Below are positions 57,050 through 64,000 of a stretch of 64,000 nt of DNA, piece by piece. The position numbers and the translations under genes are program-made. The notes under the pieces were generated by a model. That model made no database searches. It saw only the letters and a list, made by a program, of their open reading frames with translations, and was not told the origin of the DNA. How positions within the stretch are numbered: position 1 is the first letter of the stretch; each line of letters begins with the position of its first letter. Where the stretch lies: the IMG/VR virus record IMGVR_UViG_3300029993_000005, positions 166,111 to 230,110 of that record; one strand, given 5' to 3'.

Positions 57050-58498
57050 TTATAGTCCACTGTCAGTTCGAAAATTAGAAAAGGCCCACACATCTGAGTC
57101 GTCGTGCTCGTCGTCATACAGTTCACGATTTGCATGGGCTAGGGGCGTCCAATCGCTGTAGACCGCAGCAATAGGCCCAAGGAAGGGCGAAGCGATGTTT
57201 AACACGAATTCAAATGGTAGGTCCTCTGGTTCGCAATAACCTTGATTAGGATTGTCCAGCATCCAAACAATAGCACCTAACATTGAACCCACTACCTGCA
57301 ATGTTGTTGCGTTTTGCCCTTCTACCAGTTCCCGTGATTCTTCGATAGAAAGTTGCGATCCGTACCACAGGGCATTCCGTTCATGACCTAGAAGCAAGAC
57401 CCCTAGTTCATCGATTCCGCTCTGAATACTATTTTTAGCAATTCGGGTCTTTCTGTGCATCCACAATTCTTGTCCCTTCATTTCATGGACAGACGCAATT
57501 GCAGCATCACACGGTTGATACGCATAGTAACAGGTCGGTCGATAATTCTCTGTACTAAAGTATTCGCTGATAGTGATGGCTTCCGAGTGCTGAATCAAAT
57601 AGCCGTTGAATGTACCGCCCAAAGGTACCCACGACTTAACCGTGGTCTCCACACCCGGTTGCTCTAGATAGAGCACAGAGCCACCAGCGAGTTCTTTACC
57701 GTCAGCAGGAATCTCTTTTTCGTGCGTGCCCCACCCCATTTCTGCTGGTGCTCGACCCTCAGCCCAGAACCCTTCACAGCTCCAGGTGTTGACGAATTCA
57801 TTAACACGCTTGGGTTCTTTCAGAATTTGTGTATCGCGCTCAGCCGTTTGAATTATTTTCACATTCAGGGCTTCAGCTAGCATTCCCCATTGCTCTTGGG
57901 ACTCAGGGGTCCCTGTTTTCAGACCTGTATCTTTTGCGAGTTTGAGCAACGCCGCTTTAACAAAATGCGAAACTAGACCTGGATTAGCTCCATGCGTCAC
58001 CACACAGGTAGAGGCCCCAGGATAGGCCGAGGCCATTCTTCGCATTTCTTGATGCGTTGTGTAGAGCGTGCGTTCACCCAGTTCCGGAATGATTTCGTCG
58101 GGTTCAGTAGCCCAACGTTCGATAGACGTGTCAATGTAGAGCACATTATTTTGTAGGCACCACTCAACGATTTCTAGTCCGTCTATGTTCAAGCTTACGT
58201 TAATCAGTAAGTCACCGGGACTCAATAATTCATTTAGTGTTGGCACCAAATTAGATTTGACGATTTCACGATGAACGTAAGTTACACCCAAATCTTCGTA
58301 TTTAGCAAATTCAGGGCGTACCTCTTTATCCAGAACGACTACCGCGCTAGGACTTACATCGAGGTGACGTAGAATTACGGGGAGAATCGATTGACCAACA
58401 CCACCGAAGCCTAGGACCAGGATATGTCCTCTGTGAGTTGCTAGTTTTTCGTGTTGATCCTCCAGCAGTCGTTGTGCAGCGTGTATTTGAACCTTCAT
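57050..58498 (-). CDS. hss: Homospermidine synthase
   Basis: GFGGVG Rossmann motif, YIDTSIERW, THGANPGLVSHF, NTWSCEGF..EG..PAEMGWGTHE, HSEAITI, NATTLQV; ATG 58498 with AAGGA RBS. Confidence 0.93.
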   Translation of the reverse strand: MKVQIHAAQRLLEDQHEKLATHRGHILVLGFGGVGQSILPVILRHLDVSPSAVVVLDKEVRPEFAKYEDLGVTYVHREIVKSNLVPTLNELLSPGDLLINVSLNIDGLEIVEWCLQNNVLYIDTSIERWATEPDEIIPELGERTLYTTHQEMRRMASAYPGASTCVVTHGANPGLVSHFVKAALLKLAKDTGLKTGTPESQEQWGMLAEALNVKIIQTAERDTQILKEPKRVNEFVNTWSCEGFWAEGRAPAEMGWGTHEKEIPADGKELAGGSVLYLEQPGVETTVKSWVPLGGTFNGYLIQHSEAITISEYFSTENYRPTCYYAYQPCDAAIASVHEMKGQELWMHRKTRIAKNSIQSGIDELGVLLLGHERNALWYGSQLSIEESRELVEGQNATTLQVVGSMLGAIVWMLDNPNQGYCEPEDLPFEFVLNIASPFLGPIAAVYSDWTPLAHANRELYDDEHDDSDVWAFSNFRTDSGL

Positions 58499-58529
58499 AT
58501 CAATCCTTTTAAGCACTTTCACTTTCAGC

Positions 58530-58967
58530 TCACGCAACGCTGATAATTTTTGTTTTATTTCCTATGTCCTCTAATTCTACTTCGTGCTCACCTTTACTGA
58601 AATGATTGACCTCGGCGGACCTAGCCTTTGCCCAGTCGTTTGCATAAAGCTTGGCCTCAACGTCTTTTAACGGCGCGTCAACGATCACGAAGTCCTCGTT
58701 GTCCGGACGTTCATACGCATACTGCAGTGTATTTACCCAACCCTCGAAAGCATCTGCTTCCATCTTGGAGACCGCGACTAGGCGTAAGGCTGCTTCAACT
58801 TTAGTGCTACCTGTCATTTTGTGATAAATATAATTAGTCAAAGCATAGGGCTCTTTCTTGCCGCTGCTTTTCTTGGCCTTATCCTCAGCGTCCTTCCATT
58901 TATGTTCAAGACTTTTCTTGCTACCTTTGCCTTGTTTTACGTCATGTTTAATTATGTTATTGGGCAT
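58530..58967 (-). CDS. Two-domain basic protein with an AALRL linker
   Basis: MPNN..KGSKKSLEHKWKDA..; KVEAALRLVA between the domains. Confidence 0.7.
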   Translation of the reverse strand: MPNNIIKHDVKQGKGSKKSLEHKWKDAEDKAKKSSGKKEPYALTNYIYHKMTGSTKVEAALRLVAVSKMEADAFEGWVNTLQYAYERPDNEDFVIVDAPLKDVEAKLYANDWAKARSAEVNHFSKGEHEVELEDIGNKTKIISVA

Positions 58968-59311: not shown

Positions 59312-59347
59312 AAAAAAGAAAAAGGGTGGAATTTTTAGTTCCACCCT
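59312..59347 (-). terminator. Intrinsic terminator
   Basis: AGGGTGGAA/TTCCACCCT stem followed by UUUUCUUUUUU. Confidence 0.85.
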
Positions 59348-59371
59348 CCTTTACCACACAATAATTAAGAG

Positions 59372-60268
59372 TTATTCATTTATCAACGTTTTCGACCAAA
59401 CCTTAAGTTCCTCTTCTTCGTCATAGTCTTCATCCGCAGCTTCGTCATCTTCATCTTCGTCAGTATCTAGTCCTTCGGCATGAAGAATGTCGGTCATCGG
59501 GTTACACAGCAATTCTTCACCGATAACAGAGAAATCATTAACCAACTGTGACACACCTTCGTATTCAGTAATCAGTTCTTGGGTACCGAACAAGGTGGCA
59601 TAAATATGCTGTTCGGGTGGCATGAAATTCGGACCTTTCTCGACTTTGCCTGTTGCCTCGTTCTTGATAGGCAACCCGTTCTCGTCGAGCTTGGTAAAGT
59701 TCGAACCCATAATACAGGCCAGCATAGACTCCAAAGGAATACCATACTTCAGACTTTCGCTGCGGATGTAGACTACCATGTCACCGAGCCAATCGCCCAA
59801 GGCTACAAGTATCTGGCGCTCGACTTCTGTGGTGCCATCGTCATTGAATTGGAAGCCTGTGCTCTTGTCATGCAGGTAGGCTTTCATGAATGTCTCTGCC
59901 GTGGCCTTAGCACGTTTCGCCGACACGCCGTTGCTGGTCGCCAAATTAGTTACGTCTTGCTCGGTGATGTCCACATTTTCATGTGATGCACGACGGGCCT
60001 GCATCAGGGCTAGAATTTCATGACCCTCGCTGATCTCATCGCTAAGTACACCAAGAAACTTTTGAAGTCTGGCTTCCGGGGGCTCGTTCAGGTATTCGTC
60101 CTTGATCGTCGGGCTTTCGTTGATTGGCAGCGTGTACATTGTGTTCATGCGGACAATGCACCAGGGGAAATACTGGCCGAAAGACAGACCGGTGGCCTGG
60201 AATTCATTGGCCGACGAGCCAACGACGTGGTGATAGGTTTTCAGATCCATGCTATTAATGTTTGTCAT
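59372..60268 (-). CDS. MazG-like / PRA-PH family NTP pyrophosphohydrolase with an acidic tail
   Basis: DEISE..D.LGD.VVY..SNFTKLDENG.P..GKV.KGP.F.PP. Confidence 0.8.
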   Translation of the reverse strand: MTNINSMDLKTYHHVVGSSANEFQATGLSFGQYFPWCIVRMNTMYTLPINESPTIKDEYLNEPPEARLQKFLGVLSDEISEGHEILALMQARRASHENVDITEQDVTNLATSNGVSAKRAKATAETFMKAYLHDKSTGFQFNDDGTTEVERQILVALGDWLGDMVVYIRSESLKYGIPLESMLACIMGSNFTKLDENGLPIKNEATGKVEKGPNFMPPEQHIYATLFGTQELITEYEGVSQLVNDFSVIGEELLCNPMTDILHAEGLDTDEDEDDEAADEDYDEEEELKVWSKTLINE

Positions 60269-60330
60269 CTTTGTTTCTCTTGTTGGGAAGGGTGATTGGT
60301 ACTCTAACTTTCTTGCTGCTGGTTATAAGA

Positions 60331-60573
60331 CTAAGATTGAATATTCGCAGTTACGTAGTCGATAACCTCTTGAACATTACTGAACTTTTCTGCCTCCTCG
60401 TTATTGACCTCTAGTTCGAATTCATCCTCAATAGCTATCAAAAGTTCGAGCTCGTCTAGGCTGTCGATACCCAAGTCATTGACGAAGTTTGAGGTTGGAA
60501 GAACTTCATAGATAGCTAGTCCTAGCTGTTCAGCTACGATGTTGATGACCCGATCCTGAATACTAGTTTCCAT
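60331..60573 (-). CDS. acpP: Acyl carrier protein (canonical DSL)
   Basis: RV..IVAEQLG..F.NDLGIDSLD.LELLIAIEDEF. Confidence 0.93.
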   Translation of the reverse strand: METSIQDRVINIVAEQLGLAIYEVLPTSNFVNDLGIDSLDELELLIAIEDEFELEVNNEEAEKFSNVQEVIDYVTANIQS

Positions 60574-60633
60574 TTGTTTATCCTTTAGTTGACTTTATTT
60601 ACTAGGTGTCCTATGCATCAATCAGTTTCGCAC

Positions 60634-60951
60634 TTAGGCTGTCGATACCCAGGTTGCTGCAGTCTTCATATCGGCTAGGTCCTGGCCGGTGAAACCTCCT
60701 ATCTGGATTGGAATCGTCCCTGTAAGTCCACTGAATGTTATGGTCTGTAGTTGTTGAATTTTCAAATGCTTAACTTCGGCTACAGATTTCCCGTCTTTCA
60801 AAAATACAAGGTTAACAACCGGCTCGTCATTAACTTCAGACTGACGATACTGGACGCTCAAGCTATCGAACGATATTTGCATTTTGGATTTCAACTCAGA
60901 TTCGGCTGAAAGTTGAGCTAGTCCTGCTCCGGTTATAGTCGGGGATATCAT
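60634..60951 (-). CDS. Hypothetical protein
   Basis: ORF in a packed operon. Confidence 0.6.
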   Translation of the reverse strand: MISPTITGAGLAQLSAESELKSKMQISFDSLSVQYRQSEVNDEPVVNLVFLKDGKSVAEVKHLKIQQLQTITFSGLTGTIPIQIGGFTGQDLADMKTAATWVSTA

Positions 60952-61391
60952 AGTATTTGTCCATGTCTGGCAAAGAAATGCTCTACGCGGTTGAGCCAGA
61001 CTTGACGATCTGACAAATGATTTGGTTGGTCGTTGTCGGCAATCTTAATCGCGGTTCGTTCCCCCGCAATCCCGCGAATACCAAACAAAATAGTAGTCTC
61101 TACTAGACTTATTTTGAAAACGCAGGCTAGTGCTTCAAAACCGGATAAATACTCACCATTAACTATGCAATAAGGTTTCCCCCGAACATGTCGTTTAAGT
61201 CCACGATCATTAAACAAGGGATTAACTGCAAGTGTACCAGCGGCACAGGCCAAGGTGCGACACGGGTCAACCATGTGGGGCTGACACCATTTCTCTAGGT
61301 CGATATCCTCGTCAGATGTAGTCTTGATTAGGGCATAAGCATCTCGAAACAAATCCCAGTCAATGTCCTCAGTATCGCGATAATCTTTCAT
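60948..61391 (-). CDS. Hypothetical protein
   Basis: C.T.ACAAG pattern seen in small phage proteins. Confidence 0.65.
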   Translation of the reverse strand: MKDYRDTEDIDWDLFRDAYALIKTTSDEDIDLEKWCQPHMVDPCRTLACAAGTLAVNPLFNDRGLKRHVRGKPYCIVNGEYLSGFEALACVFKISLVETTILFGIRGIAGERTAIKIADNDQPNHLSDRQVWLNRVEHFFARHGQIL

Positions 61392-61403
61392 GTCAAATAT
61401 CCT

Positions 61404-61682
61404 TTAAACAATATTTAGATTCAAATCTCTGATACGTAAGTTTACCAGTTGCTTGTTCACCTCGGATACTAAATCTTTGACCCTTGATTCCGGAGTAAAC
61501 AATTTTTCGTCAATCGGGACTTGAAGTTCGCGCTCTACGGTAAGAGCTAGGTCCAGAATATGGAGAGCATCCAAACCCAAACTCTTGAATGTAGAATCCA
61601 GTGTGGCTGCGGAAACACCGAATGCTATGCCAGCCACGGTGTCAAACACGTAGGCTGCAAGTTCTTGATTGGTCATGACCAT
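61404..61682 (-). CDS. ACP-fold protein lacking the phosphopantetheine Ser (LGLDAL)
   Basis: F.SLGLDALHILDLAL.VE.ELQV.I..V.DLV; the codon at the Ser position is GCT. Confidence 0.75.
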   Translation of the reverse strand: MVMTNQELAAYVFDTVAGIAFGVSAATLDSTFKSLGLDALHILDLALTVERELQVPIDEKLFTPESRVKDLVSEVNKQLVNLRIRDLNLNIV

Positions 61683-62014
61683 TCCTTAGTCATTATTACG
61701 CTGGGGTTTCTTCCCCACCCGTTATAACAGTCTTCAATAATTGCTGTTTTTACGTCGATCCACGCTTTCGACCAGTCCCAAGCAATACCATAAGCTTTAA
61801 CTGTGTCTCCGGTGTAGAAGCCGGAAGTCACCACACCAGTTATGTCCAAAGAGTAGTCATAATTCTCGGGACACAAATTAGAAAAACGCAGGACCTCGAT
61901 TTCTGAATAGTTGGTCTCTGACGGATTAGAGTACACATAAACTAAAGAAAACGAGTTGACTCCATTTTCAGTAGTCTTTATGAGATGAACATCGGTGTAC
62001 TGAATTGATAACAT
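61673..62014 (-). CDS. Hypothetical protein
   Basis: ORF in a packed operon. Confidence 0.6.
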   Translation of the reverse strand: MLSIQYTDVHLIKTTENGVNSFSLVYVYSNPSETNYSEIEVLRFSNLCPENYDYSLDITGVVTSGFYTGDTVKAYGIAWDWSKAWIDVKTAIIEDCYNGWGRNPSVIMTKEWS

Positions 62015-62016
62015 GA

Positions 62017-62268
62017 TCAGTCTTTGTCCTTACCTTCAATCAGTTTGAAATTCAGATCCGGATCGTCAACTAAATTCTTGATTGCTGCAGATACCCGTCC
62101 AGCTTTCTCAAAAGGAATGGTAATACCGTTACGACCTATTTTCCAGTCATCCGGTTCTTTCTTAGTCTTGTAGATTTGGCGGATTGAAATACGCTTGGAT
62201 CCATCTTCGAATTTGATGGCCTCGATTCTGAGTCCCGAACTCGGCGTTATTGCAAGTATTTTTGCCAT
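62017..62268 (-). CDS. PC4/p15-like ssDNA-binding protein
   Basis: ISIRQIY..DWKIGRNGITIP. Confidence 0.75.
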   Translation of the reverse strand: MAKILAITPSSGLRIEAIKFEDGSKRISIRQIYKTKKEPDDWKIGRNGITIPFEKAGRVSAAIKNLVDDPDLNFKLIEGKDKD

Positions 62269-63473: not shown

Positions 63474-64000
63474 TCAAGCCTCAATCAACAGCTTCAGTAA
63501 GGTATCGCGCTCCCAGAGCCAATGAGATTCAGCTGAATTGGCTGACAGTGCTAACTCTGCTGATGACCATACTGCTGACCAGTAGGCTGAAAGTGCTGAT
63601 GACCATACTGCTGAACCTGTTACTGACCAGTAGGCTGCTGACAGTGCTGAATCTGCTGCTGACCGGACGATATCGAAAGAACCTGCTGCCCGTGCTGAAT
63701 GTGCTGCTTCTTTACGCTGGTCCTCCGTAGCTGTTCCCTCAATCTTTGCCCTGCAATAGTTGATAATCAACTGGAGGGCATCTAGACACTGGACAGCGTA
63801 GTCCTCTTTGTTATCTTTTAAGGCCTCCAGCTGCCGTTCGTGACGGGCAACTGCTAATTTCCATTGGACAGGCTCCAAATCCTTCCCTATGGGGATTGCC
63901 TCCAATAAGTCAGTACCAAATTGAGGAGCCTCTATAGCTGGCAAGCCTTCAAAAATAGAGTCAGCCAAATGTGCTAGCCATTGAGGCCTGATTTGTTTGG
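63474..64000 (-). CDS. Hypothetical protein with Ser/Ala-rich repeats; 5' end lies outside the window
   Basis: Frame stays open past 63968 to the edge (KQIRPQWLAHLADSIFEGLP). Confidence 0.75.
   Translation of the reverse strand, partial: KQIRPQWLAHLADSIFEGLPAIEAPQFGTDLLEAIPIGKDLEPVQWKLAVARHERQLEALKDNKEDYAVQCLDALQLIINYCRAKIEGTATEDQRKEAAHSARAAGSFDIVRSAADSALSAAYWSVTGSAVWSSALSAYWSAVWSSAELALSANSAESHWLWERDTLLKLLIEA

What the first reader, a model, noticed from the sequence alone, without database searches (positions are those of the whole stretch)
60331..61682. Two ACP-fold genes: one canonical (DSL) and one with Ser replaced by Ala (DAL)
Seen: 60331-60573 is AcpP-like with LGIDSLD and has its own TAGTAAATA motif. 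61404-61682 keeps the ACP helix pattern but reads LGLDALH, so it cannot carry phosphopantetheine. No fatty-acid synthesis or PPTase gene is in the window. Known: host AcpP also binds non-FAS partners (SpoT, MukB, IscS, Tn7 TnsD). Inference: the pair could be an acyl donor plus a permanent apo-mimic that titrates ACP-binding host proteins involved in stringent response, SMC function or defence. GCT differs from TCT by one base, so drift or a sequencing error is possible.
Basis: partly seen in the sequence, partly recalled or inferred. Interest (0 to 1): 0.6.

Follow-up and report, generated by a model that had tools for sequence, protein, structure and literature searches.

The report
Phage carrier-protein pair, one serine-less
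A 230-kb peat jumbo phage related to Ralstonia phage RSL1 carries one normal acyl carrier protein gene and a second, very diverged carrier-fold gene. In the second, the cofactor-bearing serine is genuinely alanine, so it must work without the cofactor; its partner is unknown.

Summary
ACP1 (60331-60573, minus strand) is an AcpP-type acyl carrier protein with the DSL serine. ACP2 (best start 61676, 90 aa) is an ACP-fold protein with Ala at the serine position (codon 61566-61568).

The alanine is not an error. The same protein is encoded on at least 19 contigs from independent peat assemblies, and four further runs show no difference across the locus.

ACP2 is not a recent copy of ACP1 (21% identity). 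It is an orphan: among 1.84 billion representative proteins its only true relatives are three Ser-bearing ACPs.

The phage is an RSL1/BcepSauron-like jumbo myovirus. Eight FAS, PKS and PPTase families were searched in the whole 230-kb genome and none was found. The five-gene cassette sits in a hypervariable slot between two conserved genes, and no relative carries it. Most relatives have a single Ser-bearing ACP elsewhere. The Sarumanviruses instead have degenerate ACP-like ORFs with Asp or Glu for Ser.

Best reading: ACP1 is a host-activated carrier and ACP2 is a cofactor-less binding protein or decoy. This is a new variant of a known kind, of moderate interest.

The parts
60331..60573 (-). 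ACP1: 80-aa AcpP-type acyl carrier protein with the DSL serine
   Evidence: PF00550 47.7 bits. TIGR00517 80.5 against cut-off 70.45 and NF002148 84.1 against 71. phrog_5934 'acyl carrier protein' E 2.8e-17. 44% identical to the ACP of relative G004.
60596..60604 (-). TAGTAAATA promoter-like motif 22 nt upstream of the ACP1 start
   Evidence: 9 copies in the window against 0.7 expected and 32 in the genome. The consensus is cTAGTAAATAaa with no -35 box. Other copies precede replication and nucleotide-metabolism genes.
60634..60951 (-). p105: hypothetical protein of the cassette; its start overlaps the p147 stop by 4 nt
   Evidence: ORF list. No Pfam, PHROG or NCBIfam match. No homologue in relatives.
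60948..61391 (-). p147: hypothetical phage protein of the cassette
   Evidence: Only itself in the word search. The ESM Atlas finds only viral 'hypothetical protein' clusters, best TM 0.79. The single-sequence AF2 model was unusable, pLDDT 38.7.
61404..61676 (-). ACP2: 90-aa ACP-fold protein with Ala in place of the phosphopantetheine serine (the ORF could start at 61682, giving 92 aa)
   Evidence: PF00550 23.7 bits against cut-off 20.8. AF2 model pLDDT 81 with helices 3-17, 37-51, 57-59 and 66-88. Foldseek TM 0.70-0.79 to ACPs and PCPs. VIA-align Z 10.6-12.3 with all 50 rows carrier proteins. RBS and ATGA overlap.
61566..61568 (-). GCT codon for Ala37 (90-aa numbering) at the position of the carrier serine
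   Evidence: Sequence. Aligned to the Ser of 1vku and other ACPs. Unchanged in at least 19 contigs and in four further runs.
61673..62014 (-). p113: hypothetical protein, first gene of the cassette; its stop overlaps the ACP2 start (ATGA)
   Evidence: No family match. No homologue in relatives.
62017..62268 (-). p83: conserved upstream flank of the variable slot (weak PC4-like match)
   Evidence: PF02229 E 0.0034, below the cut-off. Homologues at 34-48% identity in all relatives examined.
59372..60268 (-). p298: conserved downstream flank, MazG-like NTP pyrophosphohydrolase, probably co-transcribed with ACP1
   Evidence: phrog_671 E 9e-13. The family profile hits PDB 3nl9, a putative NTP pyrophosphohydrolase, at E 4.6e-4. 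41-49% identical in relatives.
59319..59351 (-). Terminator-like hairpin (13 pairs plus a T run) after p298

Best explanation
The window is the end of a 230-kb RSL1/BcepSauron-like jumbo myophage from peat. A 1.75-kb, five-gene cassette (p113-ACP2-p147-p105-ACP1) sits in a fast-turnover accessory slot between two conserved genes. It holds two ACP-fold genes that are not recent copies of each other.

ACP1 belongs to the AcpP-like carrier lineage that most phages of this group carry. It keeps the serine. Because the phage encodes no PPTase and no FAS enzymes, ACP1 must be activated by the host AcpS and used by host acyl-ACP enzymes. It appears to be expressed with the replication and nucleotide-metabolism gene class, from its own TAGTAAATA site and together with a MazG-like gene.

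ACP2 is a long-diverged orphan carrier-fold protein whose serine is fixed as alanine, so it cannot carry phosphopantetheine or an acyl chain. The most likely role is a cofactor-independent binding module. In this reading it is a decoy that occupies the docking site of some protein that normally receives a carrier protein. First candidates are a host PPTase or a host acyl-ACP or apo-ACP client.

Shown: gene structures, family, fold, the Ala, its fixation in the population, absence of partner enzymes in the phage, uniqueness of the cassette, and recurrence of Ser-less ACP-like ORFs in related phages.

Inferred: that ACP2 is functional, that it acts by binding, and every candidate target.
For: - Family and fold of both proteins.
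- The Ala is real and fixed.
- ACP2 looks like an expressed gene. It has an intact ORF, AAGGA at the ideal spacing, and an ATGA overlap with p113. The fold prediction is confident. The cassette GC of 43.1% is within about 1 sd of the genome's 45.4 +/- 2.1%.
- No PPTase, KS, FabH, FabD, SDR, AMP-ligase, PlsC or class I/II aminotransferase family was found anywhere in the genome.
- A Ser-bearing ACP is shared by relatives G001, G004 and G005, and by RSL1, Motura and BCSR5.
- Ser-less ACP-like ORFs arose independently in the related Sarumanviruses. Examples are gp118 with DDL, and gp350 with GLDEND in BcepSauron and GLDEHD in BcepSaruman.
- Engineered Ser-to-Ala carrier proteins still dock on PPTases (PDB 2cg5, matched).
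- Apo-ACP is a potent growth inhibitor in E. coli (Keating, Carey and Cronan 1995, as cited in PMC8557913).
- A natural Ser-less ACP works purely by binding in Plasmodium (PMC8547962).
Against: - There is no conservation evidence. ACP2 has no orthologue in any relative.
- The population is clonal, 99.7-100% identical over the stretches that overlap the window, so selection cannot be measured.
- The slot turns over quickly, so ACP2 could be a passenger on its way out.
- Helix II has lost two of the acidic positions used by AcpP partners, and the protein is only mildly acidic.
- No RNA run holds the locus.
- The only interaction test run, with neighbours p113 and p147, gave no verdict.
- The host is unknown.
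Confidence: 0.4

Rival explanations
1. ACP2 is a neutral or decaying relic. It was once a carrier gene, lost its serine, and is being carried along in a rapidly turning-over accessory slot without any function.
For: - It is an orphan. Only three true homologues reach E<=1e-3 among 1.84 billion representatives, and all keep the Ser.
- It is absent from every relative. The slot differs in each phage, from 0.27 to 2.95 kb with unrelated content.
- It is a weak family match at 23.7 bits.
- The partner-facing acidic residues are partly lost.
- There are no data on selection.
Against: - The ORF is intact with a good RBS and is translationally coupled to its neighbour.
- The four-helix fold is predicted with confidence from only six aligned sequences.
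- Composition is ameliorated to the genome.
- The allele is fixed in every sample examined.
- Phage genomes usually purge useless DNA quickly.
- Related phages keep other Ser-less ACP-like ORFs. The Glu variant is shared by two Sarumanvirus species.
Confidence: 0.25
2. ACP2 is an adaptor or subunit for phage-encoded proteins of its own cassette (p113, p147, p105, or ACP1 itself), not a host-directed decoy. ACPs serve as structural subunits in several large complexes.
For: - The ATGA overlap with p113 and the 12-nt gap to p147 suggest stoichiometric co-production.
- The five genes occur only together.
- Top structural matches include ACPs that are built-in subunits of the Ycf2-FtsHi motor, ATP synthase and complex I.
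Against: - No positive evidence of binding exists. The one complex job gave no verdict and counts neither way.
- The neighbours have no recognisable family.
- No LYR-type ACP-binding protein is found in the genome.
Confidence: 0.15
3. One reading: ACP2 is a permanent apo-AcpP mimic that titrates AcpP-binding host regulators (SpoT, MukB, IscS, Tn7-like TnsD, defence proteins), while ACP1 acts as an acyl donor.
For: - ACP2 has the same fold as AcpP with the Ser replaced, so it would be permanently 'apo'.
- ACP1 and ACP2 share one cassette next to a MazG-like gene.
- The cassette lies in an accessory slot of the kind that often holds host-takeover genes.
Against: - ACP2 is a poor copy of AcpP. 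It scores 13 bits on TIGR00517 against 80.5 for ACP1.
- Its protein-language-model neighbours are PKS-type and secondary ACPs.
- Helix II has His and Arg at the AcpP Asp38 and Glu48 positions, and net charge is -5 against -17.
- ACP1 would be the better AcpP mimic.
- From memory, not checked here: several AcpP partner interactions, SpoT included, were reported to need the holo form. PMC3340395 lists S36T among the ACP mutants studied for SpoT binding.
Confidence: 0.08
4. The Ala is an assembly or sequencing error, or a rare variant, and the real gene encodes Ser. Alternatively ACP2 is modified at another residue such as the Ser of LDST eight residues upstream.
For: GCT and TCT differ by one base. 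A DS dipeptide lies in the loop before helix II.
Against: - The identical protein is encoded on at least 19 contigs from independent JGI, ENA and Logan assemblies.
- There are no differing letters in contigs of four further runs that cover the codon.
- PPTases modify the Ser at the N-terminus of helix II, which the model and alignments assign to Ala37.
Confidence: 0.02

Closest known systems
Bacterial AcpP (type II FAS acyl carrier protein; TIGR00517, PF00550)
   Same: ACP1 passes the AcpP equivalog cut-off. It has the DSL serine and a very acidic helix II (pI 4.05) and is 80 aa long. ACP2 shares the four-helix fold (Z 10.6-12.3).
   Different: ACP1 is phage-encoded with no partner enzymes in the phage genome. 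ACP2 has Ala for Ser, scores only 13 bits on the AcpP model, has His and Arg in helix II, and has a helix IV about 12 residues longer.
Apicomplexan mitochondrial ACP without the serine (Plasmodium mACP Ser->Phe; Toxoplasma Cys or Gly; PMC8547962; PDB 3ce7)
   Same: It is a natural ACP-fold protein that lost the phosphopantetheine site in a setting without FAS II or a PPTase, and it works purely through protein binding. 3ce7 is among the structural matches of the ACP2 model.
   Different: The partner there is the LYR protein Isd11 with Nfs1, and the Phe is part of that interface. The phage has no LYR-family protein and carries Ala rather than a bulky residue. The two are unrelated in sequence beyond the family, and the setting is eukaryotic rather than viral.
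Engineered Ser->Ala carrier proteins and apo-ACP toxicity (human FAS ACP S->A with its PPTase, PDB 2cg5; DltC S36A, 4bpf; Keating, Carey and Cronan 1995)
   Same: The substitution is the same and at the same position. 2cg5_B even shares the LGLDAL string with ACP2. These cases show that Ser-less ACPs still dock on PPTases and that unmodified ACP can poison a cell.
   Different: Those are laboratory mutants or overproduced host ACP. ACP2 is a natural, strongly diverged protein whose binding to any PPTase or acyltransferase is untested.
Phage-encoded ACPs (PHROG 5934; RSL1, Motura, BCSR5; tandem ACPs of Pseudomonas phage HRDY3; duplicated ACPs in Flavobacterium jumbophages, PMC13573597; ACP in Eneladusvirus virions, PMC7760394)
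   Same: ACP1 belongs to this widespread class, whose function is unexplained. 379 GenBank phage records match the clade ACP. Two ACP genes in one jumbo phage have been seen before.
   Different: In HRDY3 both copies keep DSL. I found no report of a phage ACP paralogue lacking the serine. Here the clade's ACP sits in a different locus from that of its relatives.
Sarumanvirus ACP-like ORFs (BcepSauron gp118, gp350, gp366 and a 617-aa repeat protein; annotated as hypothetical proteins)
   Same: They come from the same phage group (MCP 82% identical). They are ACP-like by PF00550 or by PDB matches, with the serine replaced by Asp in gp118 and Glu in gp350.
   Different: They are not orthologues of ACP2 and lie at other loci. 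The matches are weaker (13.8 to 30.4 bits) and some are multi-domain. Those phages have no canonical ACP beside them.

Membership tests
PF00550 PP-binding / acyl carrier protein superfamily | Sequence match above the curated gathering score | tested here: met
   ACP1 scores 47.7 bits and ACP2 23.7 bits against a cut-off of 20.8. In the six-frame scan of the genome they score 47 and 23.3 bits.
PF00550 PP-binding / acyl carrier protein superfamily | Four-helix ACP fold with helix II starting at the modified residue | tested here: met
   ACP2 model: pLDDT 81, helix II begins at residue 37. TM is 0.70-0.79, and VIA-align gives Z 10.6-12.3 at rmsd 1.3-2.0 A over 70-80 residues, carrier proteins only. 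ACP1 was not folded and is judged by sequence only.
PF00550 PP-binding / acyl carrier protein superfamily | Conserved serine (D-S-L) that receives 4'-phosphopantetheine | tested here: not met
   ACP2 reads D-A-L at the aligned column. ACP1 reads D-S-L, so it meets the feature. ACP2 is therefore filed as ACP-fold, not as a carrier.
PF00550 PP-binding / acyl carrier protein superfamily | Actual phosphopantetheinylation by a PPTase and acyl loading | not testable with these tools
   This needs in vitro AcpS or Sfp plus CoA and mass spectrometry. The phage genome has no PF01648 PPTase.
AcpP equivalog (TIGR00517 / NF002148) | Score above the equivalog cut-off | tested here: met
   ACP1 meets it: 80.5 against 70.45 and 84.1 against 71. 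ACP2 does not: 13.0 and 17.2 bits.
   By alignment ACP2 has D, H, D, E, R at these positions, with net charge -5 and pI 4.6. ACP1 has D, D, E, E, D, with net charge -17 and pI 4.05. The surface is partly kept and partly reversed. Binding was not tested.
Ppant-independent ACPs of the apicomplexan mACP type | Ser replaced, no cognate FAS or PPTase in the compartment, and an LYR-motif partner | tested here: inconclusive
   Ser is replaced and no FAS or PPTase genes are found in the phage. No LYR-family protein is found in the phage. The host was not examined.
Clade ACP of RSL1-like jumbo phages | Detectable orthology to the single ACP of relatives, at the conserved locus | tested here: inconclusive
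   ACP1 scores 54.8 bits (44% identity) to the G004 ACP and 26.8 bits to the G001 ACP. It lies in the p83-p298 slot, whereas relatives have it 0.8-3 kb from the homologue of G000:21023-21916. ACP2 has no specific similarity, at most 6.9 bits.

The most novel reading that the evidence does not exclude
Serine-less ACP-fold proteins are a recurrent, so far unrecognised class of phage host-takeover proteins in RSL1-like jumbo phages (Ala here; Asp and Glu in the Sarumanviruses). They would act as dead carrier proteins that trap host enzymes which dock ACP, such as AcpS-type PPTases or the acyltransferases and synthases of lipid metabolism. A phage-encoded Ser-bearing ACP, ACP1 here, would meanwhile supply or redirect the acyl-carrier pool.
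Probability: 0.12. Interest if true: 0.7.

Novelty: new variant of a known kind. Interest (0 to 1): 0.45.

Why it matters
Phage-encoded ACPs are common in large phages. 379 GenBank phage records match this clade's ACP, yet no function has been shown for any of them.

A natural, fixed Ser-to-Ala ACP-fold gene next to a canonical one separates the two possible modes of action, acyl carrying and pure protein binding, within one phage. Further Ser-less ACP-like ORFs occur in the cultured relatives BcepSauron and BcepSaruman, so the question can be tested in the laboratory.

If the Ser-less forms are decoys for ACP-docking enzymes, they would be a new way for phages to control host lipid metabolism. 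They would also be a second, independent example, after apicomplexan mACP, of the ACP fold being reused without its cofactor.

If ACP2 is a relic, the finding is only an annotation detail.

Tried and rejected
- Word-based protein searches with ACP2, ACP1 and p147 returned only the proteins themselves.
- Megablast and tblastn of the region, ACP2, ACP1 and p147 against GenBank phages gave nothing or chance-level hits at E>=2. ACP1 is probably masked as low complexity. The G004 ACP worked as a query instead.
- The search for related loci with ACP2 found only identical contigs. With p298 alone it found only identical contigs, while the p298 profile worked.
- The exhaustive search gave six hits. 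Two of them (P0004, P0006) are spurious repeat proteins.
- P0007, the nearest standalone relative, lies in an unrelated high-GC element with no synteny.
- Complex prediction with p113, p147 and ACP2 gave no verdict (score 0.02). This is not evidence either way.
- AF2 on p147 from a single sequence gave pLDDT 38.7, so no fold search was made.
- PADLOC found nothing for the cassette.
- dN/dS or any other test of selection was impossible because the population is clonal.
- No RNA run holds the locus, so expression is unknown.
- One-mismatch variants of TAGTAAATA are not above chance, 22 against 18 expected. I therefore make no claim about a promoter for the ACP2 unit.
- Recent foreign origin of the cassette was considered and rejected. 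Its GC lies within about 1 sd of the genome's.
- The 'acetyltransferase' annotation of the p298 homologue in BcepSauron would have made an ACP plus acyltransferase operon. It is not supported, because the profile and PHROG point to an NTP pyrophosphohydrolase.
- Read laying was given 1,801 letters.
Full report
WHAT IS THERE. Both ORFs lie on the minus strand.

ACP1 (60331-60573, 80 aa, LGIDSLD) matches PF00550 at 47.7 bits. It passes NCBI's AcpP equivalog TIGR00517 (80.5 against 70.45) and NF002148 (84.1 against 71).

ACP2 is the ORF 61404-61682 (LGLDALH). It matches PF00550 at 23.7 bits, above the cut-off of 20.8. Its likelier start is the ATG at 61674-61676, which gives 90 aa. That start has AAGGA 7 nt upstream and overlaps the stop of the upstream gene p113 as ATGA. 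Public gene calls use the same start. The Ala codon is at 61566-61568 (GCT on the coding strand).

THE ALANINE IS REAL.
- The exact protein is encoded on at least 19 contigs from JGI, ENA and Logan assemblies of different peat samples.
- Contigs of four other peat runs cover the codon and show no differing letter over 60300-62100.
- The sibling loci are 99.7-100% identical to the window over the 3-8.6 kb they share with it. That rules out an error, but it also means no test of selection is possible.

FAMILY AND FOLD.
- An AF2 model of ACP2 (six-row alignment, pLDDT 81) has helices 3-17, 37-51, 57-59 and 66-88. Ala37 is the first residue of helix II.
- Foldseek returns only carrier proteins among its top rows, with TM 0.70-0.79.
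- VIA-align gives Z 10.6-12.3 at rmsd 1.3-2.0 A over 70-80 residues, and all 50 rows are ACPs or PCPs.
- phmmer against the PDB aligns the Ala with the Ser of Thermotoga ACP 1vku (E 1.5e-5). It also finds the engineered Ser-to-Ala human FAS ACP that was crystallised on its PPTase (2cg5), which shares the LGLDAL string.
- Protein-language-model neighbours are PF00550 clusters in 28 of 30 hits, mostly PKS-type or secondary ACPs.

ACP2 IS AN OLD ORPHAN, NOT A FRESH DUPLICATE.
- ACP1 and ACP2 are each other's only relatives in the genome, but they are only 21% identical.
- An exhaustive HMMER scan of 1.84 billion representatives gave six hits at E<=1e-3. One is ACP2 itself. Two are spurious repeat proteins. 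Three are true carrier proteins, and all three have Ser: a 90-aa peat protein (41% identity over 49 residues), a tandem-ACP protein, and a PKS.
- The nearest of these lies in an unrelated element.

THE GENOME.
- The window is the last 64 kb of a 230,110-bp IMG/VR record that CheckV rates 97% complete.
- It encodes a major head protein, portal, tail sheath, tail tube and tail fibres.
- The head protein is 82% identical to those of Burkholderia phages BcepSauron and BcepSaruman, 77% to Ralstonia phage RSL1, 73% to BCSR5 and 61% to Achromobacter phage Motura. This is therefore an RSL1-like jumbo myophage, probably of a betaproteobacterial host, which is an inference.
- The whole genome has no match at E<=1 to PPTase, AMP-ligase, ketosynthase, FabH, FabD, SDR, PlsC or class I/II aminotransferase families. 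It also has no match to LYR proteins.

THE CASSETTE.
- The gene order in the direction of transcription is p83, p113, ACP2, p147, p105, ACP1, p298.
- p113/ACP2 and p147/p105 overlap by ATGA.
- TAGTAAATA lies 22 nt before the ACP1 start. The motif is strongly over-represented (9 against 0.7 expected in the window, 32 in the genome) and has no -35 box. It also precedes genes for a DNA methyltransferase, a homing endonuclease, a DNA polymerase piece, dCMP deaminase and a large helicase.
- A 13-pair terminator-like hairpin follows p298.
- p298 is a MazG-like NTP pyrophosphohydrolase by PHROG 671 and by a profile match to PDB 3nl9.
- I infer that ACP1 and p298 form one transcription unit of the replication and nucleotide-metabolism class, and that ACP2 belongs to the unit upstream.

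COMPARATIVE GENOMICS.
- The head protein found 49 related viral loci. I fetched four near-complete relatives, G001, G002, G004 and G005, and reached nine distinct relatives through a p298 profile.
- All keep p149...p83-[slot]-p298...NUDIX, and several also keep the dCMP deaminase. The slot between p83 and p298 ranges from 0.27 to 2.95 kb and holds unrelated ORFs in each phage.
- None of our five cassette genes has a homologue in any relative, and no relative's slot holds an ACP-like ORF.
- The cassette GC (43.1%) lies within about 1 sd of the genome's.
- G001, G004 and G005 have one Ser-bearing ACP at another locus, 0.8-3 kb from the homologue of G000:21023-21916. Our genome has no ACP at that locus.
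- RSL1, Motura and BCSR5 also have one Ser-bearing ACP each; their loci were not compared.
- ACP1 is 44% identical to the G004 ACP (54.8 bits), which is as close as the relatives' ACPs are to one another. ACP1 is therefore probably the clade's ACP in a new place.
- G002 has none, and 16 fragments have none, which is not decisive.
- G022 is BcepSauron, with identical length and coordinates. It and BcepSaruman lack a canonical ACP but have degenerate ACP-like ORFs annotated as hypothetical:
  - gp118 (83 aa) reads DDL at the aligned column. All 60 listed PDB matches are ACPs or ACP subunits.
  - gp350 is a two-domain protein scoring 30.4 bits, with GLDEND in BcepSauron and GLDEHD in BcepSaruman.
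  - There are also gp366 and a 617-aa repeat protein.
- Loss of the serine in ACP-fold proteins has therefore happened more than once in this phage group.

HOW IT MOST LIKELY WORKS.

Shown:
- ACP1 has every sequence feature of a carrier, and the phage has no enzyme to load or use it.
- ACP2 has the fold without the attachment site.

Inferred:
- ACP1 is made holo by the host AcpS and feeds host acyl-ACP enzymes.
- ACP2 acts by binding alone. The precedents are:
  - Ser-to-Ala carrier proteins that still dock on PPTases (2cg5; DltC S36A, 4bpf).
  - The toxicity of apo-ACP in E. coli (Keating et al. 1995, cited in PMC8557913).
  - The Ppant-less mitochondrial ACP of Plasmodium, which works by binding Isd11-Nfs1 (PMC8547962).
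- I favour a decoy for a carrier-protein-docking enzyme (confidence 0.4).
- ACP2 is a poor copy of AcpP. It scores 13 bits on TIGR00517, has His and Arg at the Asp38 and Glu48 positions, and has net charge -5 against -17.
- A relic (0.25) and an adaptor for cassette proteins (0.15) remain open.

KNOWN OR NEW. Phage ACPs are well known as annotations. Duplicated ACPs have been reported in Flavobacterium jumbophages (PMC13573597), an ACP has been found in Eneladusvirus virions (PMC7760394), and Pseudomonas phage HRDY3 has two adjacent ACPs that both keep DSL. In the literature searches made here I found no report of a phage ACP paralogue without the serine. I rate this a new variant of a known kind, with interest 0.45.

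LIMITS. The host is unknown. There is no expression data and no selection data. The one complex prediction gave no verdict, and the neighbours have no assignable function.

Noticed in passing
window 7503, 13662, 16154, 18280, 29910 (+); 28038, 46189, 56475, 60604 (-); 32 sites in the genome: TAGTAAATA (extended consensus cTAGTAAATAaa, no -35 element) is about 13-fold over-represented and follows gene orientation. In most window cases it sits 15-80 nt upstream of a start codon, though two sites lie 155-186 nt away. Genes it precedes include a DNA methyltransferase, a homing endonuclease, a DNA polymerase piece, dCMP deaminase, a large helicase and ACP1. It looks like a phage-specific promoter for the replication and nucleotide-metabolism class.
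   Followed up: partly
window 60269-62016, between p83 (62017-62268) and p298 (59372-60268); L116-L126; G001, G002, G004, G005, G022: The interval between two conserved genes is a hypervariable cargo slot in RSL1-like jumbo phages. It ranges from 0.27 to 2.95 kb and holds unrelated small ORFs in every relative examined. In BcepSauron it holds gp101, annotated 'RNA polymerase'.
   Followed up: yes
NC_049851.1 (BcepSauron = G022) 69670-69921, 221520-222341, 226849-227253, about 250.6-252.5 kb; BcepSaruman NC_049850.1 223467-223649, 251766-252131: Cultured Sarumanviruses have no canonical ACP. They have several degenerate ACP-like ORFs annotated as hypothetical, with Asp (gp118) or Glu (gp350) at the serine position, plus a 617-aa protein made of ACP-like repeats.
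   Followed up: partly
G000:21023-21916 region (outside the window); G004:96243-96692, G001:35939-36493, G005:87284-87559: In the metagenomic relatives the single clade ACP lies 0.8-3 kb from a conserved 267-298-aa gene. In G001 (184 aa) and G004 (149 aa) it carries a C-terminal extension. Our phage has no ACP at that locus, so its ACP1 appears to have moved into the p83-p298 slot.
   Followed up: partly
window 59372-60268 (-); BcepSauron gp100 (57657-58655): p298 is a conserved, very acidic MazG-like NTP pyrophosphohydrolase (PHROG 671; profile match to PDB 3nl9). Its BcepSauron homologue is annotated 'acetyltransferase', which the evidence here does not support.
   Followed up: partly
window 57050-58498 (-): A 482-aa saccharopine-dehydrogenase-fold enzyme (PF03435 plus PF16653; faint carboxynorspermidine-synthase match) is 69% identical in G004 and 63% in L126. 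It may be a polyamine-synthesis auxiliary gene. It sits beside NUDIX, dCMP deaminase and MazG-like genes.
   Followed up: no
window end 64000; L003 1-3676, L004, L006: Sibling contigs continue past the end of the record into NAMPT and NMNAT/NUDIX (NAD-salvage) genes. The record's end is therefore an assembly end, not a genome terminus. BcepSauron has the same NAD-salvage genes in the same neighbourhood.
   Followed up: partly
window 62017-62268 (-): p83, conserved across the clade, has a weak match to the PC4/p15 ssDNA-binding transcriptional coactivator family (PF02229, E 0.0034, below the cut-off).
   Followed up: no
window 63474-63968 (-): A 164-aa ORF has a low-complexity C-terminal stretch of repeated Ser/Ala/Trp motifs (SAxWS-like).
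   Followed up: no
L137 (Pseudomonas phage HRDY3, PQ015379.1 300916-301885): Two adjacent, overlapping ACP genes (236 aa and 90 aa) lie in a 314-kb jumbo phage, and both keep the DSL serine. This is a comparison case for ACP duplication without loss of the site.
   Followed up: partly
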